A stretch of DNA of 64,000 bases from Rebecca billardiae RCC1528 (Eukaryota; Protista; Haptophyta), in assembly GCA_965240325.2 (NCBI GenBank), contig OZ251238.1:1607115-1671114 (forward strand). Reading direction: 5' to 3'. The position numbers were made by a program, and so were the translations under genes. The notes beneath the pieces are model-generated. The model saw only the letters and a program-made list of their open reading frames with translations, did no database searches and was not told the DNA's origin. Shown here piece by piece: positions 17,586 through 46,800 of the stretch. The number at the start of each line of letters is the position of its first letter. The first letter of the stretch is position 1.

Positions 17586-20518
17586 CCATCACGTGCGCGC
17601 GCGCGTGCTCGGCGCGGCGCCAGTGGCGGGCGGGCGGAGGGCGCAGGAGTGCGCGATGGAGTGGCTGCGCTGCTCCCGCGCCACTGCGCGGGGCCACGTG
17701 CGCGCGCTCGCGCGCAGCGCGCTCTCTCCTCGCCAGCGTGCGCACTGCTCGATCGGCGTGCGGTCGTGCCCGAGGTGCAGAGCTTGCGTTGGGCGCGGTG
17801 GCGCGGGCGGGTGCGCACCTGGCGCCGCGTGCGGTATGCGTGCGCGGAGGCCCTCGTGCCCGCGCGACGGCGCGCGCGGTCGACCTGGCATCGCGGGGAG
17901 AGGCGATGGCTCCTGACGATGCAGTCTCGCTGCGAGGCGGCGGGCGCTGCCATCGTCCTCTGCGCCTTTTTCCTTCCCGCGCATTTCGCGACGCTCCGTT
18001 TTGTTTTTGGTTTTCTTTCTCGCCGGCGCGGTCCGCTGTCCACGATGGCCGTCCGGCCTTTTCCGCACGGGCGCACGAGCGCGTCGCCTCGCCGCAGCGA
18101 CTTGGGCGCGGCAAGAGGGCGCGATGGCGCCCTGCGCGGCGGGCACGCGGCGTGCAGCGCGAATGCATCGTGTCCAGCTCATCGCGAGATGGCTCGCACG
18201 CTGCCGTTGCGAAGGCGGGGCCGCGGCGACGGCTCGCGGTCGGCATTGCGCTCGCGTGATGCGGCCGCGCGTGAAGCGGGCTGGCGCACGGCCGGCGCGC
18301 CACGGGCTGGCGGGGAGCGCCGGGTAACACCCACCTGGCCCGTGTCGCGCACGCGCGAACGCGCGCTGCCCACCGCGCCGGCCAGGGGCGCCGTGGGAAT
18401 GTTGCCACGCGCGACGGCCCGGGGGACGGTCGGGACTGGCCGCCCACCAGTCGCGCGCGCGCGCGCGCGCGCGCCCGGCGCGCGACGCGCGAGCGGAGTG
18501 CGCGTGCGTGCGCGAATGGCCGATGGCGCTGCGCCCGCGCCACTGCGCGGGGCTGCGTGCGCGTACCCGCGCGCGGCCTGCTCCCTTGTGGACGGCGTGT
18601 GCACGCACGGCTCTGCATGCGGCCGCGACCGCCGTGGCGCGGCGCCCGCTGCCCGGGGACGGTGGCGCGGGCGGGTGCGCGCCGGGCGCCGGGTGACGCG
18701 TCTTCGCTGCGGCGCGCGCCTCCTCGGCCCGTGCGCGACCGCGCGCGCCTGCAGTTGCGCGAGCGGGCGCGGGCGGAGTGGCGAAGGCGCCGCTCGCGCC
18801 CGGAGGCGATGCCGCCATCGCTCTTTCCACCGGGCTGGCGGCCAGCCGCTGACGAAACGAATAGAAACGAATCCGTGTGGTCGTCTGGGCTTTCTTTTCG
18901 CGGAGCAGCCAGCATGGCTGCCGAGGCGGCGGATGGCACGTTGCTTTTTGTCGTTGGCGCTCACGGCACGCTCGCGGCGGCGCGGCGGCGTGCGGCGCGA
19001 GCGCGTGCTCGCACAGCTGGCGAGTCGCGCGCGGCACCGCTGCTCGAGACAGCGAGTGCCATCGCCGCGCAGCAGCGTCGCGTCAAAGAGCGCCGCAGCC
19101 AAGCGCGCGGCCCGCTGAGTGTAACGGCTTCCTGCCCGCCGCCGGCGCGTGCCGGCGGCGAGCACGCAGGGCTCGGCGCGTGCGCGCCCTCCGGTGCCAG
19201 ACGCGAAGGCATGCGTCTTGGAGGCATACGTCACACGGCCAGCCCCTGTGCCACCGCGCCAGCGTGAGACTCGGCGCCAGTGCTCGGTCCGGCCGGCAGC
19301 CCGGCCGCCCTCAGCGTGCAGTCGGACGGCCTCCTGGGATGGCGGGTTGGGCGGCGGACGAGCGACGAAGGGCGTCTGCTGGCGAGCCTTGGCCGCGCCG
19401 TGTGCGTAGTCTAGCCAAGCAGCCTTCGCCCGCACCCGCGCCCGCCGTCGCCATTTGTAGTATGGTCGCCAGTTGCCGTGCACCCTGCGCACGGCGTGCC
19501 GACCACGCGGCAGCTGCTGGCCTCTGCCTTCCGGCCGGCGAAGTGCGATGAGCCGCGGCGCAGCACGCGGCGGTCAAGCCGAGCGCGAGGCATGGGACCC
19601 CCTGGCTACCCGCACGAGGGCGCACGCGACGACCTCGAGCCACCGATGCTGGGCCTGGGGCAGCGCGCGCTGCCGTCGCGGGCTGTAGTCCATCGCGTGC
19701 CCGAGTGGGCGCGACGGCAGCGCGTGGGGCGGTGCGAGCCAGCCGGGCGACCGCAGCGCGTGCTGCTCGGCGGCGGCGTGGCGGGAGCGCGCCGCGTACG
19801 TGGCTGGCGCCGCGCACTATCTGAGCTGCCCCCGCCCCCGCACCCCCCATCTTCCACCTCGTCCGAGCTGCCTCTAGTGCGCGCCATCACGGCCGCGAGC
19901 GGCCTACGCGCAGCTGCTGCATGCCGCTGGTCGCGCACGCGCCTCACGTCGAAGGCGCGGCCGCCCCTTACAGGGACGCGTGCACGTGGCGATCGAGACG
20001 AGCACACCCGAGCGCGGTCAGCGCGGGTCGGCAGTGGCGAGCAAGCAGAAGAGCAGTCTACATGTTGAACGGCCGCGCACGCCGCGGCCGAGCTCTGCGC
20101 GCAGACTTGGCAGCTGTTCACGCGTGGCTGGCGGGCACCGCGCACTGCGCGGCGTCGTGCGTGCGAGTGACGGAGACGCGAGTGCATTCCCCCAGCAAGC
20201 GCGCTCGGCCGCTCGGCCGTGCGCTCGCGCGGCCGCGCGCGGCCTGCAGCGTTTGCGTGGCAGCGCGGGCCGAGTGACGGGCGGGCAGTGCGCTCGCGCC
20301 GCCGCGCACGATCGCGATCGCAGCGCGTGGGACGTGGCGAGCTGGCCGAGGCGCTTTGGGCGCGCGCTTCGACGGCGCGCGGATCCTCTCGCGCCACACT
20401 GCGCCAGCGGGCGCGCGCACGCGACACAGCCGCCCTCCGGCGGCCGGCCGGGAAGCGGCGCCGCCATGCTGGCTTCCGAGGCCGAGTTGACCTTTCCGGT
20501 TTTCCCTCGCCTGGAATA
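17586..20518. repeat. Further copy of the subtelomeric macro-repeat
   Basis: Colinear with ~4150-6500 and ~1850-2700 (same modules in the same order). Confidence 0.85.
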
Positions 20519-22533
20519 GACCCCTTCAGGGACGGTTACGGCAGCCATGCTGACCCAGACCAGCGCAGGTCGTCTCGGGGTACGCTGGTGGCGTCTCTGG
20601 ATGCCCGGCGAGCACCTTGCTGCGGCGTCGACGTGCTAGCCGACGGGCGTTAAGGACTTGTTGAAGGACTTGGCGCCCGTCTCGGAGGTGATCGGCGTTG
20701 ATGAGCTCGCTGGTAAGGTGTTCGCCGTCGACGCGAGCATCTGGATCCACCAGCTCGCCACTATCCATGCTGATGTGCTCGATGCGGGTGATTATCCAAC
20801 GCGGCCTCTTCTTGTCGCGCGCGCGACGGCCCCATCGCATGGGACTGATTGCACAAGGTTGCCTGCGCGATAGTTTTGCGAGCGCGTCAGACTCGGCTGC
20901 TCGGAGCGATGCTGCGAATACGTGTGCGCGCCTGTCAACAGCGGGGCAATCCTTCACCACGCGACCCTACTGGTTTCTGCGTGGGCAAGACCACACCCAC
21001 CAGTGACATCTGTAGCCTAGCGATCAGCCAGCTGTTCGGCGCGTGCCACGTGGCTGGCGCTGCTGCACCGCGAGCGGCGCGCGGGCTGCGCTGTCACCGC
21101 ACGGCAGCAGCTGTGGCTGCGACACACCGGTCGAGCCGCGACAGGGTGCCTGCTGGCCCATGGCTGCACATGCGCGGATTCGTGCACAGCCAGCGGCATG
21201 CTGCTGGACGGTGCACGCCAGGGTTGGCCCCCACGCGAATATGAATCGCTCCTGGCAGGCTGGTAGCTTTTAGAGATGGACGACAAACTGCGCCGGGCGG
21301 GGCCGCGCTCGGCACCTCGGCCGAGAATCACAGCGTGTCGCCTCACTGCATGTCTCTCACATCCGCACTGGAGGCACAGTGCACGGCCGCCCGCGGAGCG
21401 CCGCAGACAGCCCTTAGAGCAGTGCGGCAGGTGTTTAACAAAACTGAGCAGAGAGCGCGGCAGCACGGCGCCGGATGCACTTACCCCCACGTGCGCGTGC
21501 ACGCCCGCAGTGCGGTCTCACTGAGTGACCTAATTCGCGCCGGAGTGTTAGGCTCCGCGTATACAATGAGCACTACGTAGTTCGGCTGGCACAGGGCAGG
21601 CAGCTCCGCTCACGCCTGACGGGCGGTGATGCCGTGGCGCGGCGCGGCGTGGCTGAGATTTCGATCAATGATAGGAGTAGGCAGCACGCTGATGCTGCGC
21701 CACCGCCGCAGCGGCGTGGAACCCCGCGGTATTACCCACACGAGTGTGCATATAAGCACTACATCACGGCCTGCACAGCAGCAGCGGTAGTGCACGACTC
21801 TAGCTGAAGCCGAGTGTGTCACACCGTCTGTCAAGACTGATGTGTGACGCGCACGACCCCTGAAGTGACGGCACTGACAGTGACTGACGCACACACGACG
21901 ATGAGTAGTAAAATATTCGAGCCGCGCTTTCGCGGATGCACTGATGATGCTGAGTTGGTGCCACTGAGATCATGAAGCGCGAGGCCCCGTAGCATACCCG
22001 CACGAGTGCGCACGAGCTGGCCACGGCTCAGATTCGAGCTGTCCGTTCGGCCGCACGCTCGCAACGGCAATGGCAGCGCGTGCGGCGGTATAGTGGCCCC
22101 AGTGCATGCTACTCGACGGCGCGTGGCGCGAGAGCGTTGCAACGTACCCGGCGCCACGCACCAGCCGAACTGCCCCCGCCCCCGCACCCGGTCTCACATA
22201 CCTCGCCCAACCTGACTCCAGTACGCGCCGTCACGGCCGAACCAAACGGCCGAGCAGCAACTACTGAATGCAGCTGGTCGTGGGTGCGCGTGGTGGTCGA
22301 GACGAGCACACTCGAGCGGGATCAGCGGGCCGGCGGCAGCGCCAACAGTCGCACACGCATCGACCTGTCCCACAGGGCAGGTCGCCCCCTCGTGGCTTCT
22401 GGCTCGGCGAGCTCGGCCGCCGCGCATGCTCACCCTCATGGCCCCCGAGACGCCCAGCGTACCCCGAGACGCTCCTCGAGACGGGCTGCGAACCGACATC
22501 AGCATGGCTGCCGTAACCGTCCCTGAAGGGGTC
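20519..22533. mobile_element. Non-autonomous TIR element (~2.0 kb) with TA target-site duplication, carrying captured fragments
   Basis: Perfect 35-bp TIR GACCCCTTCAGGGACGGTTACGGCAGCCATGCTGA (20519-20553; reverse complement 22499-22533) plus an 18-bp subterminal IR (20571-20588 / 22454-22471). TA at 20517-18 and 22534-35. Removing the element restores CGCCTGGAATATTCGGTTGG, similar to the empty sites at ~2700 and ~8637. Confidence 0.85.
20643..20795 (+). pseudogene. XPG/FEN1/EXO1/GEN1-family (PIN-like) nuclease N-terminal fragment
   Basis: Translates (ACG)GVKDLLKDLAPVSEVIGVDELAGKVFAVDASIWIHQL, matching the XPG-N signature MG[VI]xxLxxxL...GKxxAVDxSIW. The start codon appears mutated to ACG and similarity is lost after ~50 codons. 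Confidence 0.7.
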
Positions 22534-22709
22534 TATTCGGTTGGAATGGGCGGGTCACGCCCGGATTTGTGCAACATCCAGGAGAGCCCGGACGCTTCTC
22601 ATCGATCGCCAGATGAAGATCTGAGATAATTATCGGCGGCAGGTCGGCGACATTCGAGGCTGCCGGGCGGGCCGTCGCCAGCTCGCGGTGGGCGCCGCCT
22701 TTCCCTCCA

Positions 22710-23885
22710 ATGGCGCCGCGCCGACCCGCGAGGGCCCGGCGCCCCGCGGGGCCGAAGGGCGCGCGCGCGGCGGAGGCCGCGCTCGTGCGCGCCGCCCTGC
22801 GCGGCGGCGCTGCGGCGCGCGCGCGGCTGCGCGCGCGCTGGCCGGTGCTCGCCTCCGTGCGCGAGTCGTGCGCGTACCGCGGCTTCGACTTCCACCGGCT
22901 CAACCTGCTCGGCTGGGGCTCGAGCGTGTGGCGCGAGCGCGTGCTCGCCGTGCGCGGCGCGTCGCTCGTGCCGCCGCTGCCCGACGCGTCGCGCGTCACC
23001 GCGCCGCGCGGCGTCGCCGCCACGTCGTGCGCGCCGCGCGGCCGCGGCGGCCCGTACCACGCGCGCGGGCTGCCGATCCGCGGCGTGCGCGGCGGCGGCT
23101 ACCTGCGCTTCTTCGACGCGAAGGGGCGCGAGCTCGGCACGTCCGCGGGGCTGGGCGCGGGGCTGCGCCTCGCGCTCGAGACGATGGGAGTGCCGCGCGC
23201 CGCGCGCGTCGCCGCCGAGCTGCGCGAGCCGCGCACGCGCGCGCTGCTGCGGCGCTGGCTGCCGCGCGGCGACACGCGGCCCATCCGCGCGCTCGAGCTC
23301 GGCGTGCCCGTGCCCGCGTACCGCCGCGTGCTGCGCGGCGTGCTGGCGGAGCTGCGCGCGCGGCTCGGCGTCGCGCCCGCCGACGTCGCGTTCATCGACC
23401 TCGGCGCGGCGCTCGGCCTGACGAGCATCGCCGCGTGGGCGGAGGGCGTGCGCACGTTTGTGGGCGCGGACGTGGCGGACACGCCGTACGCGGCGCTGCT
23501 CGGCGGCGTGTACGGCGCGCGCGCGGAGCTGGTGCGGCTCGACCTGGCGTCCGAGGGCGCGCCGGCGCGCGTGTGCGCGCTCGTCGCGCGCGTGCGCGCC
23601 GAGCTCGAGGCGCGCTCGGGCGGCCGCCCCGTCGCGGTGGTCGTGCACGCGTCGCCGCCGTGCGGGCCGATCGCCGCGGTGAACACGACGGGCGGGCGCG
23701 CGGCCATCGCCGCGGCGCGCACGCGCGGCTTCGCCGTCGTCGAGCGCTTCCTCGACGCGCTCGTCGCGGTGATGGCGCCGGCGCGGCGCGGCGCGGCGCG
23801 CGGCGCGCGGGCCGACGCGTGCACCTTCGAGGAGGTCGCCACGCTGATGCCGTACCTGGTGCGCGCGGCGCGGCGGCGGCAGTAG
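22710..23885 (+). CDS. Circularly permuted C5-cytosine DNA methyltransferase-like protein (391 aa)
   Basis: Strong GC3 codon bias. Motifs in permuted order: VII/VIII GFDFHRLNLLGWGSSVWRERVLAV (~22881-22952), IX LETMGVP (~23175-23195), X IRALELGVPVPAYRRV (~23283-23330), I FIDLGAALG (23391-23417), II GADV, III RLDL, IV HASPPC (23646-23663), VI FEEV (23826-23837). A (TA)n tract follows the stop. Confidence 0.7.
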   Translation: MAPRRPARARRPAGPKGARAAEAALVRAALRGGAAARARLRARWPVLASVRESCAYRGFDFHRLNLLGWGSSVWRERVLAVRGASLVPPLPDASRVTAPRGVAATSCAPRGRGGPYHARGLPIRGVRGGGYLRFFDAKGRELGTSAGLGAGLRLALETMGVPRAARVAAELREPRTRALLRRWLPRGDTRPIRALELGVPVPAYRRVLRGVLAELRARLGVAPADVAFIDLGAALGLTSIAAWAEGVRTFVGADVADTPYAALLGGVYGARAELVRLDLASEGAPARVCALVARVRAELEARSGGRPVAVVVHASPPCGPIAAVNTTGGRAAIAAARTRGFAVVERFLDALVAVMAPARRGAARGARADACTFEEVATLMPYLVRAARRRQ

Positions 23886-24529
23886 CGTCGCGGGCCGTCG
23901 CCGGGCGCGGCGCTCTGCTATTACTATCATCTATATATATATATATATTATTGGGTAGTAACGCGAGCTCCGAGCGTGCCGAGCCCTGCTAAAAGCTCAC
24001 CGGCGCGCACTCGGGCGCGTCGTCGATGCCGTCGCTGAGTTCACTCGCTGCCACCGCGGACGGTGAGCAACCGCTTGACTGCGGCGATTAACCCGCCGGC
24101 GGGCCGATATCATTACTAGTGATATTACTACCGTGGCGGGCCCGCGGCGGCGCATGTGGGCGGGGTTCAGGGCCAGGCGAGGGCGGTCACTAGTGGCGGC
24201 GGTACGGGCGGGCGACCGCCCGGCACTGCGGTCCTGACCGGATCGCCGCGGGCCCCGGTGGCGGCGCCCACTGAGTGCGTCAGCGACCGGCGGGTGCCAC
24301 TGCGAGCGGTCAGCCGGCCCCGGGCACCGTGCTGACTGCTGCTCGCCTGCTCAGGGCCAGGCCCGTCGGTCGGTCACGACGATACTCGACGGTCAATTGA
24401 TCTTCTCAGCATTGGGACCGTATTTCGTCATGTTAGATATGCCGATGACGACATGCTGTATGATATGATATATGCGCGCTGTGCCGCTTGAAGCGTAGTG
24501 ACGACAGAGGGCGGGCGGCGCATGGTCTC

Positions 24530-25216
24530 TCAGCGCGTCTGGGAGAACGGCGCCGTGTCCGCCACCCCGTGGCGGGCGGCCACGCGCCCCTCGTTCACCT
24601 CGCACACCGCCGCCATGAGCGCCTTGAACGCCTTCGCGTGCATGGGTTTGTGGCGCTTCTGTTCGAGCATGGTCTCCAGCTCGTGCATGGTCATCGGCAT
24701 GTGGGGCGCCGGGTACGGCACGGGGCGCGCGAGCTCGATGGCGCCCACGACCGCCGATGCGGTGGGTTTCTCCGGCGCGGCGCCGCGCGTGAACGCAAAG
24801 CCCAGGATCGCGCTGTGAGGCAGGTCGCCGCGCAGCCCCTCGCGCGCCGCGCGCAGCGCCGTCGCCTCAGCCGCGTGCCGCCCGCGCACCGTCCTGTTCT
24901 TGCTCGCGCGGAAGGCCCATGCCACGAGCTCGCCGCTGGGCACGATCTGCGTCTCGCGGCGCTTCTCGAAGCACGCGATCGCGGAGGCGAAGGGCTGCTG
25001 TAGCGGGAAGATGCCACCCACGCGCGCGCCGAACGTGCGGAAGAAGGTCGCGAGGTGCCGCTCGTAGTGGCGCGCCGACGCGAGCTTGTACCGGCGGCCG
25101 ACGACCCCCTTCCGCCGGGGGTTGCGCTCGAGCCGCGCGATGGCGCACTTTGCGGTCCCCATCGCGTTTGAAGTTTGAACCCGGCCCAGTCGCAAACTCC
25201 GAGTGCTTACCCCCAT
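24530..25216 (-). CDS. ASCH/PUA-like domain protein (210-228 aa; likely start at ATG 25162)
   Basis: IFPLQQPFASAIACFEKRRETQ matches the ASCH signature (L)SxxQP[WFY]AxxIxxGxKxxExR. It is followed by LPHSAILGFA (LPxGAIxG) and IELARPVPYP (LxxPIP). Codon-biased, with an AT-rich tract downstream. Confidence 0.6.
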   Translation of the reverse strand: MGVSTRSLRLGRVQTSNAMGTAKCAIARLERNPRRKGVVGRRYKLASARHYERHLATFFRTFGARVGGIFPLQQPFASAIACFEKRRETQIVPSGELVAWAFRASKNRTVRGRHAAEATALRAAREGLRGDLPHSAILGFAFTRGAAPEKPTASAVVGAIELARPVPYPAPHMPMTMHELETMLEQKRHKPMHAKAFKALMAAVCEVNEGRVAARHGVADTAPFSQTR

Positions 25217-25658: not shown

Positions 25659-25706
25659 AATCTCGCCTGCCTGAGCTGTGTGCGTCTCTTATTCTTAGTA
25701 AACTGT
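25659..25706 (-). repeat. ~48-bp junction motif, copy 1 (ACAGTTTACTAAGAATAAGAGACGCACACAGCTCAGGCAGGCGAGATT read on the minus strand)
   Basis: Exact reverse complement of 42927-42974. Confidence 0.9.
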
Positions 25707-26084: not shown

Positions 26085-28703
26085 TCATCTCGCGGCCGTG
26101 GCCGCGTCCGCCTCGTCGCTGCGCCGCCGCTTGCGGCAGGGCGGCGGCGACGGCGCCGCCGGCTCCGCGGTGAGCCGGTCGAGCACGAGCACCGCGAGCT
26201 CGGCGCACAGCAGCACGGGCACGTGGTAGTACTCGCGCGGCGCCGCCTTCACCTGCGCGGCGTGCCGCACGCGGCCGGTGCCGGGCGCGCGCTCGCACTG
26301 CTCGCACGGCGCCGCGTCCGAGCACGGCGGGCGCAGCGCGCCCTCGGGCGGCGCCACGCTCGCGCTGCGCCCGCGCCCGACGAGGATGAGCTGCGTCGGC
26401 TTCCGCGCGCCGTGCACCGCTGGCTCGAACGCGCCCGCCTCGCCGGCGCCGCCCTCGCGCGCGCGCGCGCGCCCGCCGCGCACGCGGCCGTCGAGCGCCG
26501 CGTGCGCGTACGCGCAGTGCGTCGTCACGTGCAGGTGCGCGCGCGGCGCGGGCGCCTCCTCGTGCAGCTGGCGCACGAGCGGCAGGCTGAACGCGCTCGC
26601 GCCCAGCGGCATCTCGAGCACCGCCTGGCTGCCGCCGTCCGTCGCCTCGTCGGCGAGCCGCGCGGCGAGCGCGTTGCGCGTCGCGAGCTGCTCCGCCTCG
26701 TGCTGCGGCACGGCGCGCGCGAGCTCGGCGGCGAAGCGGTGCCGGTTGTGGCACGCGCCGCACGTCTGCCCGCCGTTGAGCACCGAGCTCTCGGAGCACG
26801 GGCTGCCGCCCGTGCCGAGCACGGGCGGGTTGGCCGCGCGCCACGCGTCGAACGCCAGCGCGAACCGCGGGTCGAGCATGTTGGCGACGATCGCGAGCCG
26901 CTCGCCAGGCCGCACGTGCAGCGGCGTGCGCACCTCGCCCCGCGCCCAGTGCTGCAGCGTGAAGCCCGCGTCGGCCACGAGCGTGCGCAGCAGGTCGGGG
27001 TCGCGGTCGACGGCGACGGCGGCGAGGCGCACGCGCGCGCCGCCGGGCGCGCGCGTGTGCGCCCCCACCGCGTCGCCCACGTGCAGGAACCAGCGCAGCA
27101 CCGAGGCGCCGCCCGCCGGCGCCTCCACCGCGACCGGCGCGACGCGCGCCGCGCCCGCCGCGCCGCCCTCGCCGCTGAGCGCGGCCTCGAGCGTGCCCGC
27201 GCGCAGCGGCGCGGGCGCGTGCGCGCTCAGGTCGAGCGGCCCGCCGCGCGCGAGCAGCCGCGCGAGCGCCGCCTCGGGCTGCGGCGCGAGCCGCGGCGCC
27301 GCGCCGCCGCCGCCCGCGCGGCGCCGCCACAGCGCGGCGTACACGGCGGCGACCGCGGCGGGCGGCGGCGGCCGCGGCGGCGGCGGCGCGGGCCGCGGCG
27401 GCGGCGGCGGCGGCGGCGGCGGCCGCGGCGGCGCGGCGGGCGGCACGCGCTCGGTGCGCAGCGCGCACGCCCGGGCGCCCTGCGCGAGGCGCGCGCCCAC
27501 CGACGTGTCGGGCCCCCGCCCCATCGGCAGCAGGCGCGCCGCCATGGCGGCGACGTCCTCCGTGCCGGGCTCGCCGCGCTGCGTGAGCGCGTGCGCGCCC
27601 ACGCACGACCCGCGCGGCAGGCCGCGCGGGCCGACGGCGCCGGCGGGCGCGCCGAGCACGGCGCACAGATCGCCGAGCACGGCGCCCGCCGCCACGTGCA
27701 GCACGCGCTTCGGGATCACCCGGCCGCCCGCGCCGCCGCCCACCGCCTTCTCGCCCGCGTACACGATCCACACGGGCGGCGCGCGCGCGCCGGCCGGCTG
27801 CGCGCGCAGCGCGGCCACCGCGCGCTCCAGCTCGCCGCGGCCCTGCCGAGCGCCGCCGACGGTGCCGATGTGGTAGCGCTTGGCCGGGCGCTCGAACTGC
27901 AGCTCGTCGCGCCACTTCGCGAGGCACGTCACCTCGACCACCGTGCCGCCGCCGAGCGCGGCGGCCAGGTCGCCCGCCGGCGGCTCGCCCGCCGCGAGCG
28001 CGCGCGCCACCGCGCGCGCGCGCGCGTCCGCGCACGCGGCGCGCACGTGCGCCTCGCACGCGGCGGCCGAGCCGCCGGCGCGCACGAGCTCGCACGCGGG
28101 CGCGGCGTCGAGCGCGCGCGGCGCGCGCGGCGCGGGCGGCGCGCGCGGCGCGCGCGGCGCGCGCGGCGCGCGCGGCGCGGTGCTCAGTGCGAGCAGCTCC
28201 TCGCGCGCGCGCTCGAGCGAGCCGCCCGCGCGCTCGAGCGCGCGGCGCGCCACGTCCGCCGCGCCCCCCGTCAGCCGCGCGCCGCCCCCGCGCGTCGCGG
28301 CGTCGCGCACGCACCGCAGCGCGTCGGCGCGCGCGCGCCCGTCGCCCGCGCGCGCGCACGCGTACGCGAGCTGCAGCAGCGCCGTCGGGCGCACGCGCGC
28401 GCCCGGGGCGGAGGCCTGCGTGTAGAGCCTCGCCAGCGCGTGCGGAGCGACGCCCGCCGCCGCCATCGCGGCGCGCAGCTCGCCCCACAAGCCCACGCCG
28501 CGCGCGGAGCGGCAGCGCGCGCCGCTGCCGGCGGCGCGCCCCGGCGCGCCCGCAAGCGGGCCTGCCCCGTAGGCCGCGATGAAGGCGCTGGCCGCGTCGG
28601 CGACGAGCAGCTGCTCGGCGAGCCGCGCGCAGCAGAGCAGCGCGTCGGCCTGCTCCAGCGCGTCGTTGAGCGCGGCGGCGAGCGGCGCGAGAGATGCCGT
28701 CAT
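26085..28703 (-). CDS. Divergent C5-cytosine DNA methyltransferase-like protein with long N-terminal extension (872 aa)
   Basis: Strong GC3 bias. The C-terminal half has motifs in normal order: I VEAPAGGASV, II AVDRDP, IV GGSPCSESS, VI VLEMP (ENP-like), VIII VTTHCAY...RKPTQL, X YHVPVLLCAEL. A poly-Pro linker precedes the domain, and the C-terminus has a basic NLS-like RKRRR. Confidence 0.7.
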   Translation of the reverse strand: MTASLAPLAAALNDALEQADALLCCARLAEQLLVADAASAFIAAYGAGPLAGAPGRAAGSGARCRSARGVGLWGELRAAMAAAGVAPHALARLYTQASAPGARVRPTALLQLAYACARAGDGRARADALRCVRDAATRGGGARLTGGAADVARRALERAGGSLERAREELLALSTAPRAPRAPRAPRAPPAPRAPRALDAAPACELVRAGGSAAACEAHVRAACADARARAVARALAAGEPPAGDLAAALGGGTVVEVTCLAKWRDELQFERPAKRYHIGTVGGARQGRGELERAVAALRAQPAGARAPPVWIVYAGEKAVGGGAGGRVIPKRVLHVAAGAVLGDLCAVLGAPAGAVGPRGLPRGSCVGAHALTQRGEPGTEDVAAMAARLLPMGRGPDTSVGARLAQGARACALRTERVPPAAPPRPPPPPPPPPRPAPPPPRPPPPAAVAAVYAALWRRRAGGGGAAPRLAPQPEAALARLLARGGPLDLSAHAPAPLRAGTLEAALSGEGGAAGAARVAPVAVEAPAGGASVLRWFLHVGDAVGAHTRAPGGARVRLAAVAVDRDPDLLRTLVADAGFTLQHWARGEVRTPLHVRPGERLAIVANMLDPRFALAFDAWRAANPPVLGTGGSPCSESSVLNGGQTCGACHNRHRFAAELARAVPQHEAEQLATRNALAARLADEATDGGSQAVLEMPLGASAFSLPLVRQLHEEAPAPRAHLHVTTHCAYAHAALDGRVRGGRARAREGGAGEAGAFEPAVHGARKPTQLILVGRGRSASVAPPEGALRPPCSDAAPCEQCERAPGTGRVRHAAQVKAAPREYYHVPVLLCAELAVLVLDRLTAEPAAPSPPPCRKRRRSDEADAATAAR

Positions 28704-35512: not shown

Positions 35513-37072
35513 ATGCCCGCCCGCGCTCCCAATGCCGCGCGCATTCGCGTGCAGACCGGGCCCAACGAGTTCGTTGCGGCCTGCGCCGCGCCGCTGTTTG
35601 ACGCGCCCGACTCGCTCGAGGCCGTGTGCCTCCTCAACGGCCTCAAGCTCGTCGCCGCGACGGATGACGCGAGCGCGGCAGGTATCGCCAAGGCGCTTGG
35701 CGAGCGGCCCGACGTGGTCGTCGTCTCGTTCGAGGTACTGGCGGCCGTGAACAGCCTCGAGGGCGTCCCCGACGCCGCGGCGATGGCCAAGTGTCTCTCC
35801 GAGGTGAAGGACCTCCGCGTCATGGCGGGTTGCGCGTCGTCCCTGGCGGGTTTCGGCGCTCGCGGCGGCGCAGTCACGTCGTTCTCCAGCGACGCGCTGG
35901 CGCGGCTCCGTAGCCGACCTGTCGCCGACCTCCTCAACGAGCGCGTGCAGATCCCCGACGGCGCGTGCCAAGGCGCGACGGCTCGCACGTTGCTCCTGCC
36001 CGCGATCGCTGTCGACGCCGATGCCGACGCGCTCGTGGAGGCGTGCTGCGGCGCTGGGCGCGTAGGCGCGGGCGCCGGGTCGATCATGGCGTTCCTCGAG
36101 TTCGGCGTGCTGCACCAGTTCCCCGCGCTCCGGGCCATGAAAGCTGGCCTCGCCTCGCGCGGGAGCTCGGCCGGCGCGATGGTGCGTTGCATGCGCGCCT
36201 TCGCGGCGGTCACGGCGGCCGAGGTGGGCGACGCCGAGTCAATTCGCGCGCTCGTGCTCGAGTTCGAGGAGCGCGCCCTCCTCGACACGCCGCTGTGCGA
36301 CGCATTTACGTCCGGGCTCCTCGCCAGCGGCTTCGCGTGGATCGCAGTGAGCCTCGTCGACCTCGGTCTGTGCTCGCTGAGCATGGTGAGCCGCCTGCCG
36401 GCGATGGGCGGCAGGGACGGCACCGAGCACGCGCTCTCCCTCTCCACGCTCGCCGCTGCGGTCAGCTGGCTTGTCGAGGCGCGGCCGCAGGTGGACGACC
36501 CCGCGTTCGCGGCGAACGTCGCGAATGCGCTCGACCTCGAGAGCACGCACACGTATCCCGCGCGCTTCGTCGAGTTCGTTTGCGGCAATGCGGTCCGCGA
36601 GCAGATCAACCGGCTGCTCGCGGACGAGTCGCTCCCGTGCGCGCAGGCCGAGCCCTTCCACCTCGCGCAGCAGCGCACGCACGGGTTCGCCGCGGCTCTC
36701 AAGCAGACGAAGCGCGTGCTCCTCGGCGCCGTCCAGGCGCGCATCAACAGCGTCATCAGCGACGTGCGCGAGGCCAAATGCGTGCTTCCTGTGAGCGAGC
36801 GCGACCCAGTCGTGCTGCTGCGCGTGCCGTCCACGCGCGCGCAGGCGATCGTCGAGAAGCTCAAGGCTGCCATCGCGCAGGTGCCGCCCGAGCTGGGGCA
36901 TCCGTCCGAGACGATGTACGCGCTGGCCGCGGTCGGCGAGGGCGGCAAGCCTCTGTCCGCCGTGCTCCGTGCCCTGCGTGACGCGCACGGCAGCCAGGTG
37001 CCGCTCGTCGCCGCGCCCGCGCCCGCGGCCGGCACGCTCACGTCGCCGTCGGACGGCACCGGCGGTGGGTAG
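35513..37072 (+). CDS. Hypothetical protein (519 aa), intronless, no recognised domain
   Basis: Long ORF with GC3 bias and balanced globular composition; TA-rich tract downstream (~37309-37329). Confidence 0.7.
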   Translation: MPARAPNAARIRVQTGPNEFVAACAAPLFDAPDSLEAVCLLNGLKLVAATDDASAAGIAKALGERPDVVVVSFEVLAAVNSLEGVPDAAAMAKCLSEVKDLRVMAGCASSLAGFGARGGAVTSFSSDALARLRSRPVADLLNERVQIPDGACQGATARTLLLPAIAVDADADALVEACCGAGRVGAGAGSIMAFLEFGVLHQFPALRAMKAGLASRGSSAGAMVRCMRAFAAVTAAEVGDAESIRALVLEFEERALLDTPLCDAFTSGLLASGFAWIAVSLVDLGLCSLSMVSRLPAMGGRDGTEHALSLSTLAAAVSWLVEARPQVDDPAFAANVANALDLESTHTYPARFVEFVCGNAVREQINRLLADESLPCAQAEPFHLAQQRTHGFAAALKQTKRVLLGAVQARINSVISDVREAKCVLPVSERDPVVLLRVPSTRAQAIVEKLKAAIAQVPPELGHPSETMYALAAVGEGGKPLSAVLRALRDAHGSQVPLVAAPAPAAGTLTSPSDGTGGG

Positions 37073-37585
37073 GCGCCACGCCCGCGCGTCGGCCGTGCGC
37101 GTGCCGTGCGCCGCCTCGGTGTCGCCGCCTCGTCGTCGCGCTCGCCTCGCCGCCACGCTGCCCCTCGTCGCGCCCGTGACCCGCGGTTCGGCCTCGGTCG
37201 GGCCGGCCGCATGCATGCATGCACCACCATGTCCATACCATCTGAGTGACAGTTTCATCACCACGACGCCGTGCGGTCCCCTGGCGTTCGGACCCATCGA
37301 CGAAGCTCATATATAATAATATATATATACAGTCTGAAAGGCCCTGGGACCAAGCCAAGTTGATGCTCTGATATACGGAGGGCCTCGAGCATCATCAACC
37401 GGTCCGCGCGCCCGCGGCCGCGTTCTCGCGGGCCGTCTATCTATCTACTCGCGTCAACGCGGCGGCCGGCGCGCGAGTACGGAGTGATATATGGCATCCA
37501 TCGATCGTCACGCGTAGTGTACGTCACCGAGTCCGTGACCGTGTAGTCCGACTGTCCGACACGGACGACGACGACGACGAAATTG

Positions 37586-37587
37586 AT

Positions 37588-37638
<51 letters not shown>

Positions 37639-37707
37639 CATATATATACATATATATACATATATATACATATATATACATATATATACATATATATACA
37701 TATATAT

Positions 37708-37757
<50 letters not shown>
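37586..37757. repeat. Compound microsatellite (TACA)n (CA)n (TATATATACA)n (TA)n
   Basis: Directly visible. Confidence 0.95.
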
Positions 37758-37761
<4 letters not shown>

Positions 37762-38796
37762 TGAGCTGACGCAGCCTGGAGCGCGCATCTCAGCAGATGG
37801 CGTCGCCGCTGGGACGTCAGGGCCGGCGCCGCACCAGGCGGGCCGGCGGCATCAGCTACGGAGCAGTGGCTGGCTCTGGCGGCGCGCGCGCGCGGCGCGC
37901 GCGGCGGCAGGAGCGCGAGCGCAGCAGCGCTGGCGCGGATCGACGTGGACGCGGAGCGCGGACGCGGCAGCGCGGACGCGGAGCGACACGGACGCGGCGC
38001 GTGCGCGGGCGGTACGGCCCGGCGCAGCGCGGCACGGTGACGTCGCACGGGCATGGCCCGGCCGCCATCGTGGAAGCGTGTTGGAGTTCTCGAGAACGCA
38101 AACACGACCGTTTCATCCAGAAATTCATCACGGACGAGGACGTCCGGATTCAACGGGTACACGGATCCAGAAACCGTGTGCGACCAGCAGTTACGGCGGT
38201 GCGTCGGGAACACCTGTGATTGGTTGACGCACGGGGCGTGCGGCTCGGAATCATTGAGATTCCCCGAGCCGGGCCAGCAAACGCCGGGTCACCCCGCCGG
38301 AGCCGAAAAGAGCTCGGCGGGAGGTTAGTTTCGCTCGTCCGAAGAGCGAGGGTCAGATTGCCTCGTGGGCGTCATCGTCGACGCGCCCGGCTACGCGCCG
38401 GTGAGCTTTTAGCAGGGCTCGACACGCTCGGAGCTCGCGTTTACCCAATAATATGTGGCGCGGCTAGGCATCCCAACATAGTAATTAATTAGTGGGTTCA
38501 AAGCTCCGACCGTCACGCACCCGACGACTCCCGAGTGCTGACGATACACAATCTATCTCATTCAATCTCCCGAAATCTCGAAATGTATGAGCAAATATCT
38601 CCGTGCTGAGTCATCCGTCTACCCCAGCGGATAATCCGCGAAGCCTAAAGACGAACTGTTTATAATGCAACTTAATAGGTTCGTCTAGGCTTGATTCCTG
38701 GGTGTAGAATATTTCAGACTGTCGACTACATGTGACCCGTAGCCGGTGCGATTCTGTTGCGCAAGCGAGATCACCTTGGGCTTGGAGACCGTGACT

Positions 38797-42926: not shown

Positions 42927-42974
42927 ACAGTTTACTAAGAATAAGAGACGCACACAGCTCAGGCAGGCGAGATT
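42927..42974 (+). repeat. ~48-bp junction motif, copy 4
   Basis: Identical in opposite orientation to 25659-25706; flanked by the near-duplication TTCAGTAGCTA / TTCAGTACCTA. Confidence 0.9.
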
Positions 42975-43852: not shown

Positions 43853-46800
43853 ATGCCGTCGGCATGTTTTGATGAGCCCGCTGAGCCGAAGACGGGCTCA
43901 GGGGCTTTCTGGGACGGGTGGAGCGAGCCCAAAGTGCCTCGTCGCGAGCGCGGTACCAGACGCCGCCGAGCGCGAGCCATGGCGAGCCTCACTACCGACG
44001 ACAGTGGTGCGAGCAGCGAGGCGGGCGCGCGGCAGGTGCCGCTCGTCGTGCTCCGCGAGCCCGACCTCGCCGCGCTCGCGCCTGCTGCTGATGACAGCAG
44101 CCACTCGTCTTCGCCCTTGATGGCCGCCGCTGCGGCGGCGGTGGAGCGCGCGCGCGCCTTTGCAGCCGGCGCCGACGGCGGCGGTGACATGGCTGGGGGG
44201 CGGTGGGCCCCGACGACTGGCCTGGTCCACGCGGAGCGGGTGTCGCTGCCGGGCGAAGTCGGCGACGCGCTGCTGGTCGCCGCGCGCCCCGCGTCCGTGC
44301 AGCCGCAGGCCGACGGTGGTGGCGCGGGCGCGGCAACGCAGCCGGTCGCAACCTTTGTGCTCTACCCCAACGGCCGCGCGGATGACCATTGTCGCCTCGA
44401 GCCGGTGGCGGTGGGTACCGCGTCGGCGCTCGACGCGCTCGGGGGCGCGTTCGACGCGCGCGGCGCGCGCGGAGGCGCCCGCCCCGCCATGTTCATCCTC
44501 GGCGACGGCGACGACGGCGCGGTCGCGCGCGCACTCGCGCAGCTGCGCGATGGCACAGTCACTGTCGGCGATTTGCACAAGGTGCTCGCGGCCCGCCCGC
44601 AGGGAGCGGCGCTGGCGCGGCTGCCGTGGGCGCAGGCGGTCCAGGCGGGAGTCGCGAAGGAGCTGGATGCCACCGACGAGGACCACGGGCTGTACGGTGC
44701 GCCCGACGCCCGGTGGTGCGTGCGGCTGCTCTACGAGGTGCTGGATACGGACGCGCCCGTGCCTGAGGGCGAGGCGGGCGACACCGTCGAGGCGTGGCGA
44801 GGCGGTCTCGTCCAGTCGACGGCGGCAGGCGATCGCATCTACGCCATCGTGTGCGACGTGAGGGACACGCGCGACGCGCGGTGGCTGCGCGTGCGGCTCC
44901 CTGGCCTCCGCCTGGCGGACGTCGATGAGGCTGTCGATGGCGACGCGGTCGATCGGGCACGGTCGCGTGCGCATGCGATGAGCGCGGTTGAGGCAGACGG
45001 GGCGGACGGCGCGCATCGCGCTTTCGACGCTCGACTCGCGCTGTTGGAGCCGGTGCGTGCGGCGGGCGTGCTAGTGCACGCGTGCGAGGCTGCCGTCGCG
45101 CAGATGGGCTCCTCATCCGCCGACGCCCCCAAACACCATATCGGCGTGCTGCGGCTCGCCGCGCCGATGGGCCGTTCAGACGAGCCGAGTATGGCGGGTC
45201 GCTTTGCACTCGCCGCCGGCGGGACGGTGGACGCGTGCGGCATCACTCGCGTGCTCACGCTGCAGTGCGCGCTGATTGCGCTCGCGCTGCGCACCGGCGG
45301 CGCGACGATCGAGCCCGCGACCGGTCGGAGTGGCTCGCTCGTCCGGCGCCTCACCATCCCGCACGGGACGCGAAGGGTCGCTCGGCACAACGTGCGGTGC
45401 GGGGCGGCTGCGCGCGTCCGCGCGGCGCTGGTGAACGCGTGCACGCATCGTCAGCATGGCGGCATGCGGGAGCGCGCCAGCGCGCCGGGGCTGTGGCTCG
45501 ACGTGCCCTCGCTCGCCGTGAAGGCAGGGCCCTCGAACGCCGTGGGCCGGCTCGCGTTCGGCCCGGATGGTGAGCCGCCGCCCGAGGGCGGCGCAGACTC
45601 GCCCGGGCGGCCGTTCACAGCAGGCGTGCAGGGCGGCGCGGGCCCGCCCGAGACGGCAGGCGGTGCGGATGGTCGTGGCGGCGCGCCGATGACGCCGGCC
45701 GGGCCTGTCGCGCGTGGGCCGGAGGCGCTGGCCTCCGCCGACGCGCACGCCGAGGCGGCGGCGATCACGGCAGCGGCATCGCGGCTGGGCGCTGCGGCGC
45801 CGCCGCTGCGCGCCGCCGCTGATGCGGGCGCGGACTCGACCGCGGCTGGCGAGTCGCTCGGCGCGGCGGTGCCGCCGCTGCGCGCCGCCGCCGATGCGGG
45901 CGCGGGCGCGGACTCGGCTGGCGAGTCGCTCGGCGCGGCGGTGCCGCCGCTGCGCGCCGCCGCCGATGCGGGCGCGGGCGCGGACTCGGCTGGCGAGTCG
46001 CTCGGCGCGGCGGCGCCGCCGCTGCGCGCCGCCGCCGATGCGGGCGCGGGCGCGGCCGCGGCTGGCGCGCCACTCGGCGCGGCGGTGCCGCCGCTGCCCG
46101 CCGCCGCCGATGCGGCAGCGGGCGCGGGCGCGCCCGGCGCGCCGCTCGGCGCCGCGGCGCCGCCGCTGCCCGCCGCCGCCGATGCGGGCGCGGGCGCGGC
46201 CGCGGCCGGCGCGCCGCTCGGCGCCGCGGCGCCGCCGCTGCCCGCCGCCGCCGCATCGGGCGCGGGCGCGGGCGCGGCCGGCGCGCCGCTCGGCGCCGCG
46301 GCGCCGCCGCTGCGCGCCGCCGCCGATGCGGGCGCGGGCGCGGCCGCGCCCGGCGCGCCGCTCGGCGCCGCGGCGCCGCCGCTGCCCGCCGCCGCCGATG
46401 CGGGCGCGGGCGCGGCCGCGGCCGGCGCGCCGCTCGGCGCCGCGGCGCCGCCGCTGCGCGCCGCCGCCGATGCGGCAGCGGGCGCGGCCGCGGCCGGCGC
46501 GCCGCTCGGCGCCGCGGCGCCGCCGCTGCCCGCCGCCGCCGATGCGGGCGCGGGCGCGGCCACGGCCGGCGCGCCGCTCGGCGCCGCGGCGCCGCCGCTG
46601 CGCGCCGCCGCCGATGCGGGCGCGGGCGCGGGCGCGGCTGGCGAGTCGCTCGGCGCCGCGGCGCCGCCGCTGCGCGCCGCCGCCGATGCGGGCGCGGGCG
46701 CGGACTCGGCCGGCGCGCCGCTCGGCGCGGCGGTGCCGCCGCTGCCCGCCGCCGCCGATGCGGCAGCGGGCGCGGCCGCGGCCGGCGCGCCGCTCGGCGC

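What the first reader, a model, noticed from the sequence alone, without database searches (positions are those of the whole stretch)
22710..23885. Circularly permuted C5-DNA-methyltransferase with an unusual breakpoint (between motifs VI and VII)
Seen: the ORF ends ~15 aa after a motif-VI-like FEEV and so looks truncated. The apparently missing motifs are at the N-terminus, in order: GFDFHRLNLLGWGSSVWRERVLAV (cf. GYxxxxxxLNAxxYGxPQxRxR, VII-VIII), a variable region, LETMGVP (cf. ExxRLMGFP, IX) and RALELGVPVPAY (cf. RxLGNAVPVP, X). Motifs I, II, III, IV (SPPC) and VI follow. Established: plant DRM enzymes carry VI-X ahead of I-V, and M.BssHII carries IX-X at the front. Inference: this is a different, independent permutation. 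The catalytic Cys (IV), Glu (VI) and RxR (VIII) are retained, while SAM-binding motifs I (DLGAALG for DLFxGxG) and X (EL for GN) are altered. That could mean a changed cofactor, weak activity, or a base-flipping/trapping role.
Basis: partly seen in the sequence, partly recalled or inferred. Interest (0 to 1): 0.9.

Follow-up and report, generated by a model that had tools for sequence, protein, structure and literature searches.

The report
Orphan gene with methyltransferase-like half
A real, intron-less gene near a chromosome end of a very GC-rich pavlovophyte alga encodes a protein with no detectable relatives whose last 170 residues look like the front (cofactor-binding and catalytic) half of a DNA cytosine methyltransferase, but the claim that the missing back half sits at the protein's start, making it a new circular permutation, does not rise above chance.

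Summary
The ORF at 22710-23885 (+) is a real, complete, single-exon gene. GC at codon position 3 is 99%, and that signal starts and stops with the ORF.

The C-terminal series of motifs I, IV, V and VI (residues about 224-382, with Pro317-Cys318 and Glu374) beats the controls:
- hhalign against a motif I-VI profile gave z of about 5.5-5.9, with 0 of 200 shuffles reaching it.
- It ranked first of 361 six-frame segments of the window.
- It scored above the E. coli class I methyltransferases RsmH and RsmB.
- Protein-language-model neighbours are PF00145 fragments (score 0.88).

These values are suggestive, not genome-wide significant. HMMER, Pfam, PHROGs, NCBIfam, PDB and an exhaustive search of 1.84 billion proteins found nothing.

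The N-terminal "motifs VII-X" are at chance level: p about 0.2, rank 40 of 361, language-model score 0.55. In an AlphaFold model guided by an I-VI alignment, that region stays unfolded and the proposed hairpin does not dock.

My verdict is an orphan protein with a probable C5-methyltransferase-type half-domain (about 0.5). A complete permuted enzyme is possible but unproven (about 0.2). No RNA run was listed.

The scan noted a same-length copy on another piece of this genome (s1-350562). I could not read it.

The parts
22710..23885 (+). Complete intron-less ORF, 391 codons plus TAG
   Evidence: GC1/2/3 = 0.83/0.64/0.99. The periodic GC3 signal coincides with the ORF limits. The antisense frame that shares third positions is open for only 247 aa and has GC1 below GC2.
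22710..22844 (+). Residues 1-45: Arg/Ala-rich low-complexity N-terminus
   Evidence: 36% Ala, 27% Arg, entropy 2.57 bits.
22845..22955 (+). Residues 46-82: most hydrophobic segment, richest in A/T at codon positions 1-2.
   Evidence: Hydrophobic fraction 0.43 and GC2 0.51; the lowest GC12 of the protein is at residues 54-70. The motif VIII PSSM scores only 3.4 bits here against a null mean maximum of 3.1. pLDDT is 24-33 in the MSA-guided model.
22956..23159 (+).
   Evidence: 53% P/G/R/S/Q/E/K/N. pLDDT is below 50 in both models.
23160..23375 (+).
   Evidence: PSSM IX scores -0.4 and X 5.6 bits at the claimed sites; the null mean maximum for X is 6.2. Helix 201-219 reaches pLDDT 88-95 although no alignment row covers it.
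23376..23882 (+). Residues 223-391: C5-methyltransferase-type motif I-VI half-domain. Motif I is at 226-237, III-like Asp278, IV at 309-325 with Pro317-Cys318 (nt 23658-23663), V at 337-350, VI at 368-379 with Glu374 (FEEV, nt 23826-23837).
   Evidence: hhalign covers 117 of 121 profile columns, z 5.5-5.9, rank 1 of 361. MAFFT independently puts P317, C318, E374 and V376 on invariant columns. ESM features score 0.88 to PF00145 fragments. The MSA-guided AlphaFold model gives five strands, beta1-beta5, at pLDDT 75-95.
22499..22538 (.). 40-nt element 170 nt upstream of the ATG, with a perfect inverted copy at 20514-20553
   Evidence: the repeat finder pair I8, 100% complementary. Its role is unknown.
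23960..24031 (.). 72-nt element 75 nt downstream of the stop, with an inverted copy at 38370-38441
   Evidence: the repeat finder pair I3, 92% complementary. Its role is unknown.

Best explanation
This is a genuine, lineage-restricted subtelomeric gene. The last ~170 residues are most likely a very diverged descendant of the SAM-binding and catalytic half (motifs I-VI, strands beta1-beta5) of a C5-cytosine-methyltransferase-type Rossmann domain.

What the sequence shows:
- A strand-1/loop element, FIDLGAALG.
- Acidic residues where motifs II and III bind the cofactor.
- The Pro-Cys nucleophile dipeptide after strand 4.
- A Glu in a FEEV version of motif VI.

What is inferred: this half could still hold SAM and present Cys318 to a flipped base.

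Several signature residues are not detectable: FxGxG, the Asn of ENV, the Gln of QxRxR and the GN of motif X. No target-recognition domain is detectable either. For that reason I expect weak, altered or no canonical DNA methylation rather than a standard enzyme.
For: - The gene is real: GC3 is 0.99 and bounded by the ORF. No + strand coding signal follows before the next gene, which lies on the - strand.
- I-VI likeness by PSSM chain: 30.0 bits, p 0.003, rank 1 of 264.
- I-VI likeness by hhalign: z 5.9 and 5.5, 0 of 200 shuffles, 117 of 121 columns aligned. Rank 1 of 361 native-like segments.
- In a calibration on 189 E. coli ORFs the same profile gave Dcm 262, RsmH 21.3, RsmB 20.8, KefC 20.5 and TrkA 18.0. 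The query's 23.9 is above every non-Dcm protein.
- MAFFT places P317/C318 and E374/V376 on invariant columns. The query is identical at 10 of 33 columns conserved at 70% or more.
- ESM Atlas: 93 of 100 nearest clusters for the whole protein carry PF00145. For residues 216-391 the score is 0.88 to short PF00145 fragments.
- Minima of GC at codon positions 1-2 fall on strand 1, the motif V helix and motif VI.
Against: - No hit at all in Pfam (whole protein or pieces, E up to 10), PHROGs, NCBIfam, PDB sequences, the 5.8-billion k-mer search, the exhaustive phmmer of 1.84 billion representatives, or tblastn of phages.
- HMMER local score against my own 71-sequence profile was only 1.3 bits, with 9 of 2000 shuffles reaching it.
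- The hhalign tail probability is about 3e-4 per segment, or about 0.1 per window.
- The ESM hit shares 153 features, below the 170 typical of same-family hits.
- Structure searches of the MSA-guided model return generic Rossmann proteins and class I methyltransferases (Z 9-10), nothing specific to C5 enzymes. That model is not independent evidence, because the alignment imposed the fold.
Confidence: 0.5

Rival explanations
1. One reading: a complete C5-DNA-methyltransferase circularly permuted between motifs VI and VII. Residues 57-82 would supply strands beta6-beta7 with the RxR of motif VIII, residues 83-150 a short target-recognition region, 156-162 motif IX and 193-219 the motif X helix, which runs straight into motif I. 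This reading is nested within the best explanation; the figure given is an absolute probability.
For: - A class I methyltransferase sheet needs beta6-beta7, and the protein ends 15 residues after motif VI.
- LNx4Gx4RER has the family's exact spacing.
- Residues 46-82 are the most hydrophobic and least GC-driven segment.
- Helix 201-219 leads into strand 1 with high confidence, where a fused motif X helix would lie.
- Engineered M.MpeI and M.SssI tolerate ten permutation topologies (PMC5944983).
Against: - The chain score of 13.6-14.7 is at null level: p 0.21, rank 6 of 319.
- hhalign gives z 1.65 and 0.62, rank 40 of 361.
- Single blocks VIII, IX and X are at or below the shuffle mean.
- ESM features for residues 46-220 score 0.55, with no family.
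- AlphaFold given an I-VI alignment leaves residues 46-198 at pLDDT 24-50 and does not dock a hairpin beside strand 5.
- The Gln of motif VIII and the GN of motif X are absent.
Confidence: 0.2
2. Chance look-alike: a real orphan protein with no methyltransferase ancestry. Its Ala/Arg/Gly/Leu/Val-rich sequence, written in extremely GC-rich codons, happens to give motif-like strings.
For: - Total absence of sequence hits.
- A high background of motif-like strings in this DNA: 140 block hits of 9 bits or more, with SPPC and ECARL each occurring 4 times in the six-frame translation.
- A non-coding minus-strand frame at 22197-22330 gives an equally 'good' motif IX-X match, hhalign E 0.0014.
- The per-segment tail probability of about 3e-4 is not genome-wide significant, and the ORF was picked for these motifs.
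- The tool's own calibration says 0.88 with 153 shared features is typical of chance hits or distant relatives.
Against: - The series covers a whole subdomain in the right order and spacing, and ranks first by two methods.
- It scores above true class I methyltransferases of E. coli.
- The invariant Pro-Cys and Glu columns are matched by an independent MAFFT alignment.
- 86-93 of 100 language-model neighbours belong to one family.
Confidence: 0.3
3. A Rossmann-type or class I methyltransferase-like domain of another kind, not C5-DNA-type. One example is an RNA m5C methyltransferase-like protein using Cys318 (PC) and Cys371 (ACT, compare the TC of motif VI in RsmB/NSUN). The comparison with RsmB motifs is from my own knowledge, not a test.
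For: - Structure searches give generic class I methyltransferases (KsgA, METTL16, METTL5, TGS1) and SDR dehydrogenases at equal Z of 9-10.
- RsmB and RsmH score close to the query against the C5 I-VI profile, 20.8 and 21.3 against 23.9.
Against: - No Pfam hit to PF01189 or to any other methyltransferase or Rossmann family.
- Language-model neighbours are PF00145, with only minor PF09445 and PF05175.
- The same truncation after strand 5 would still need explaining.
Confidence: 0.1

Closest known systems
Canonical C5-cytosine DNA methyltransferases (Pfam PF00145; E. coli Dcm, phage SPPCQxFS-type enzymes, M.HhaI)
   Same: The order and spacing of motifs I, (III), IV, V and VI are the same. The Pro-Cys dipeptide and the motif VI Glu and Val fall on invariant columns.
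   Different: There is no significant HMMER or Pfam similarity. FxGxG reads G-A-A-L-G, ENV reads EEV, and PCQ reads PCG. The domain sits at the C-terminus and stops after motif VI. No demonstrable motifs VII-X or target-recognition domain were found.
Natural circularly permuted C5-methyltransferases: M.BssHII, M.Alw26I, M2.Eco31I, M.Esp3I, M2.BsaI (IX-X before I-VIII; PMC5944983) and plant DRM enzymes (VI-X before I-V; from my own knowledge)
   Different: [quoted passage not shown] Here the break would lie between VI and VII, and the permuted half is not detectable.
Engineered permutants of M.MpeI and M.SssI (PMC5944983)
   Same: They show that many break points, ten topological types, can retain some activity, so a VI/VII break is not structurally absurd.
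   Different: They are laboratory constructs from recognisable enzymes, and most were much less active than wild type.
Generic class I SAM-dependent methyltransferases and Rossmann domains (KsgA/RsmA, METTL16, RsmH, RsmB, SDRs)
   Same: The MSA-guided model's strands beta1-beta5, with a helix before strand 1, superpose at Z 9-10. The profile scores are comparable.
   Different: Those proteins carry further strands after strand 5. The query ends there.

Membership tests
C5-cytosine DNA methyltransferase (PF00145) | Match to the family HMM at or above the curated threshold | tested here: not met
   No PF00145 hit at E up to 10 for the whole protein or its halves. An own 71-sequence HMM gave 1.3 bits.
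C5-cytosine DNA methyltransferase (PF00145) | Motif IV Pro-Cys catalytic dipeptide after strand 4 | tested here: met
   SPPC at 315-318. P317 and C318 lie on invariant columns of alignment A2. The block IV PSSM scores 11.8 bits, p 0.009.
C5-cytosine DNA methyltransferase (PF00145) | Motif VI ENV (Glu that contacts the target cytosine) | tested here: inconclusive
   FEEV: E374 and V376 lie on invariant columns, and Asn is replaced by Glu. Block VI is only the second-best site, at 5.9 bits.
C5-cytosine DNA methyltransferase (PF00145) | Motif I FxGxG SAM-binding loop | tested here: not met
   The query reads DLGAALG. The family's F, G, G columns hold G232, A234 and G236. The block as a whole still scores 11.3 bits, p 0.024.
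C5-cytosine DNA methyltransferase (PF00145) | Motif VIII QxRxR on strand 7 | tested here: inconclusive
   WRER at 74-77 with LNx4Gx4RER spacing, but no Gln. The block scores 3.4 bits against a null mean maximum of 3.1.
C5-cytosine DNA methyltransferase (PF00145) | Motifs IX and X (GN) and a target-recognition domain | tested here: not met
   IX scores -0.4 and X 5.6 bits at the claimed sites, at or below null, and GN is replaced by EL. hhalign against VII-X gives z 1.65 and 0.62.
C5-cytosine DNA methyltransferase (PF00145) | Seven-stranded class I methyltransferase fold | tested here: inconclusive
   The single-sequence model is useless, pLDDT 38.8. The MSA-guided model shows strands 1-5 only, with the N-terminal region unfolded.
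C5-cytosine DNA methyltransferase (PF00145) | SAM-dependent transfer of methyl to C5 of cytosine | not testable with these tools
   Needs a biochemical assay.
Circularly permuted C5-methyltransferase | A recognisable motif X (and IX) ahead of motif I, the criterion of the REBASE search in PMC5944983 | tested here: inconclusive
   The best-scoring X-like site (189-208) does precede motif I (226), but its score is below the shuffle mean.

The most novel reading that the evidence does not exclude
This would be a natural eukaryotic C5-methyltransferase circularly permuted between motifs VI and VII. That break point is unknown in nature and independent of plant DRM and of the bacterial BssHII type. 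The enzyme would have a rewired SAM pocket and would be kept in at least two subtelomeric copies in a pavlovophyte alga.
Probability: 0.2. Interest if true: 0.75.

Novelty: new variant of a known kind. Interest (0 to 1): 0.35.

Why it matters
If the C-terminal domain is truly methyltransferase-derived, this is an architecture not described for the family: the motif I-VI half alone sits at the end of an orphan protein. It would either be the third independent natural permutation type of C5-methyltransferases or an example of a catalytic half-domain recruited to a new role.

It would also add to the sparse picture of DNA-modification genes in haptophytes. The survey I read reports DNMT5 and DNMT1/CMT-like enzymes there and found DNMT3 apparently absent (PMC9998398).

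As it stands, the case mainly shows how easily motif series can be read into translations of 75% GC DNA, and what controls are needed.

Tried and rejected
**Searches that found nothing**
- Pfam, PHROGs and NCBIfam on the whole protein and its pieces.
- PDB sequences (only a 0.24 E-value hit to PilM).
- The k-mer search of 5.8 billion proteins and the exhaustive phmmer of 1.84 billion representatives.
- tblastn of phages.
- Scans of metagenome and viral contigs for relatives.
- tblastn within the window for paralogues.
- RNA-seq runs: none was listed, so read laying could not be used and exon structure rests on GC3 alone.

**Structure**
- Single-sequence AlphaFold gave pLDDT 38.8 and is unusable.

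**A poorly spent search**
- One homologue search on E. coli Dcm returned only close orthologues. I replaced it with viral-contig scans.

**Hypotheses considered and rejected**
- A downstream + strand exon supplying motifs VIII-X. There is no GC3 periodicity until 24530-25216, and that ORF belongs to the - strand.
- A decayed methyltransferase remnant on the minus strand at 22197-22330 (PLIPLECARL...AYWSQVGRGM). Its hhalign E is 0.0014, but there is no coding periodicity and ECARL is common in this DNA, so I judge it a chance match.
- A 'DNA-modification island'. The neighbours at 24530-25216(-) and 26085-28703(-) have no Pfam hit at or near a family's curated cut-off (only a weak UBA_4 match, E 0.09, 13 bits against a cut-off of 21.8, for the 872-aa ORF). 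They have no match to the methyltransferase profile, and the 872-aa protein has no homologues.

Full report
**The gene**

The window is about 75% GC. It ends in a 194-bp satellite (51751-62879) followed by TTAGGG telomere repeats (62879-64000), so the locus is subtelomeric, about 40 kb from the chromosome end. Earlier notes of the scan place the genome in a very GC-rich haptophyte (pavlovophyte) alga.

The ORF at 22710-23885 (+) has GC1/GC2/GC3 of 0.83/0.64/0.99. The three-base periodicity begins at about 22700 and stops at about 23880, while the flanks show none. The antisense frame that shares third positions is open for only 247 codons and has GC1 below GC2. The + frame is therefore the coding one, the gene has no internal intron, and it is complete.

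The next periodic stretch downstream (24530-25216) belongs to a minus-strand ORF. I find no coding signal for a downstream + strand exon that could supply motifs VIII-X. Transcripts could not be checked, because no RNA run was listed.

**The observation**

The protein is 21% Ala, 16% Arg and 11% Gly. That composition makes motif matches found by eye risky.

**Sequence searches**

Nothing was found by any of these:
- Pfam, for the whole protein or its pieces, at E up to 10.
- PHROGs and NCBIfam.
- PDB sequences.
- The k-mer search of 5.8 billion proteins.
- The exhaustive phmmer search of 1.84 billion cluster representatives.
- tblastn against phage genomes.
- Metagenome and viral contig scans.
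- The window itself, searched for paralogues.

The protein is an orphan at the sequence level, and the gene itself appears not to be in the protein collection. The GC3-supported ORFs I scanned between 24 and 51 kb likewise have no Pfam match at or near a family's curated cut-off. The nearest is a weak UBA_4 hit, E 0.09, on the 872-aa ORF. That neighbour also has no homologues.

**Language-model neighbours**

For the whole protein, 93 of the 100 nearest ESM Atlas clusters carry PF00145, at scores of 0.80-0.81. For residues 216-391 alone the score rises to 0.88, against short phage PF00145 fragments that hold the front half of the enzyme. For residues 46-220 the best score is 0.55, with no family. 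By the tool's own calibration, 0.88 with 153 shared features is a lead, not proof.

**Own profile tests: setup**

I collected Dcm-like and SPPCQxFS-type methyltransferases from viral contigs. I reduced them to 71 sequences below 60% identity and aligned them.

**Own profile tests: results**
- HMMER local scoring was marginal. The C-half scored 1.3 bits, with 9 of 2000 shuffles reaching it. The N-half scored -2.4 bits, with 121 of 2000.
- Ungapped block PSSMs placed the best motif I hit at 226 (p 0.024) and the best motif IV hit at 309 (p 0.009). Blocks VIII, IX and X were at or below the shuffle mean.
It scores 30.0 bits against 11.6+-4.8 for shuffles (p 0.003). It ranks first of 264 six-frame segments of the window; the next scores 20.1.
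- hhalign of the C-half against a motif I-VI sub-profile aligns 117 of 121 columns, with z of 5.9 (global) and 5.5 (local), and 0 of 200 shuffles reaching it.
- hhalign of the N-half against a VII-X sub-profile gives z of 1.65 and 0.62. Both cross-controls are at null.
- Against 361 six-frame segments of the window, the query ranks first for I-VI (23.9; the others average 10.5+-2.3 and the next is 20.3). It ranks 40th for VII-X.

**How strong the I-VI match is**

A Gumbel fit puts the I-VI tail at about 3e-4 per segment, or about 0.1 per window.

As a calibration on real proteins, I ran the same profile against 189 E. coli ORFs. Dcm scored 262, and the next-best were true Rossmann or class I methyltransferase proteins: RsmH 21.3, RsmB 20.8, KefC 20.5 and TrkA 18.0. 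The query's 23.9 exceeds all of them.

MAFFT, run independently on the query plus 60 I-VI pieces, put P317, C318, E374 and V376 on invariant columns. The query is identical at 10 of 33 columns conserved at 70% or more.

**Background warnings**

Six-frame translation of this DNA gives 140 single-block hits of 9 bits or more. SPPC and ECARL each occur four times. A non-coding minus-strand frame at 22197-22330 reads PLIPLECARL...AYWSQVGRGM and scores hhalign E 0.0014 to motifs IX-X. It ranks first of 361, yet it has no coding periodicity. I take that as a chance match, and as a measure of how far such matches can go here.

**Structure**

The single-sequence AlphaFold model is useless, with pLDDT 38.8. 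I then supplied an alignment that covers only the C-half (A2) and asked whether the network would complete the fold from the N-terminus.

It modelled residues about 200-391 confidently (pLDDT 75-95). The order is helix 201-219, then strands at 226-230, 248-253, 272-276, 309-314 and 370-373 with helices in between. Residues 46-198 stayed at pLDDT 24-50, and the proposed hairpin was not docked. This model cannot count as evidence for homology, because the alignment imposes the fold. It gives no support to the permutation.

Foldseek and VIA-align return generic class I methyltransferases (KsgA, METTL16, METTL5, TGS1) and SDR dehydrogenases at Z of 9-10. The match covers strands 1-5 only, and nothing is specific to C5 enzymes.

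**Points that keep the permutation alive**
- The protein ends 15 residues after motif VI, so a full class I sheet would need strands from elsewhere.
- Residues 46-82 are the most hydrophobic segment of the protein and the least GC-driven (hydrophobic fraction 0.43, GC2 0.51, GC12 minimum at 54-70). That suggests a constrained structural element.
- LNx4Gx4RER has the family's spacing.
- A long helix leads straight into strand 1, where a fused motif X helix would sit.

**Comparison with what is known**

Natural permuted C5-methyltransferases of prokaryotes all have the break in the variable region, with IX-X first. Engineered M.MpeI and M.SssI permutants of ten topologies keep some activity (PMC5944983). 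A survey of microeukaryotic DNMTs reports DNMT5 and DNMT1/CMT-like enzymes in haptophytes, and the text never uses the words permuted or rearranged (PMC9998398). A VI/VII break would therefore be new if it were real.

**Verdict**

| Reading | Probability |
|---|---|
| C-terminal domain is C5-methyltransferase-derived | about 0.5 |
| of which a complete permuted enzyme | about 0.2 |
| of which a half-domain with an unrelated N-terminal region | about 0.3 |
| Another Rossmann or class I methyltransferase type | about 0.1 |
| Chance look-alike | about 0.3 |

The figures add up to about 0.9. The remainder covers readings I did not name.

The decisive data are an alignment with the second genomic copy noted by the scan (s1-350562) and with pavlovophyte orthologues, plus transcripts and a SAM-binding or methylation assay.

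Noticed in passing
window 20514-20553 and 22499-22538: A perfect 40-nt inverted repeat brackets 1.9 kb of non-coding DNA just upstream of the gene. The right arm lies 170 nt before the ATG.
   Followed up: no
window 23960-24031 and 38370-38441; also 25659-25706 and 42927-42974: A 72-nt (92%) and a 48-nt (100%) inverted repeat pair link intergenic spots many kilobases apart. The first lies just after this gene's stop. They may be shared regulatory or mobile-element ends.
   Followed up: no
window 22197-22330, minus strand: A non-coding frame reads PLIPLECARL...AYWSQVGRGM, then a stop, and resembles methyltransferase motifs IX-X (hhalign E 0.0014, best of 361 segments). There is no GC3 periodicity, and ECARL occurs 4 times in the window's six-frame translation, so it is probably chance.
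   Followed up: partly
window 51751-62879 and 62879-64000: A 194-bp satellite array (about 57 copies, 91-92% matches) runs directly into TTAGGG telomere repeats. The window reaches a chromosome end.
   Followed up: partly
window 24530-25216(-), 26085-28703(-), 35513-37072(+), 43853-49234(+), 49357-51426(+): The GC3-supported ORFs scanned in this subtelomeric block have no convincing Pfam match. The only hit is a sub-threshold UBA_4 match, E 0.09, on the 872-aa ORF. That ORF also has no homologues in the 5.8-billion-protein search. The earlier notes calling these ORFs ASCH and a second methyltransferase found no support in these searches.
   Followed up: partly
window 45767-47338 (+), inside ORF 43853-49234: The 1793-codon ORF, in a stretch that reaches 91% GC, contains repeated units such as [14 protein letters not shown]. 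These mimic methyltransferase motif X in PSSM scans at 12-17 bits.
   Followed up: no
window 37568-37773: An AT/AC-rich microsatellite palindrome (ACATATATAT units) lies in an otherwise GC-rich region.
   Followed up: no
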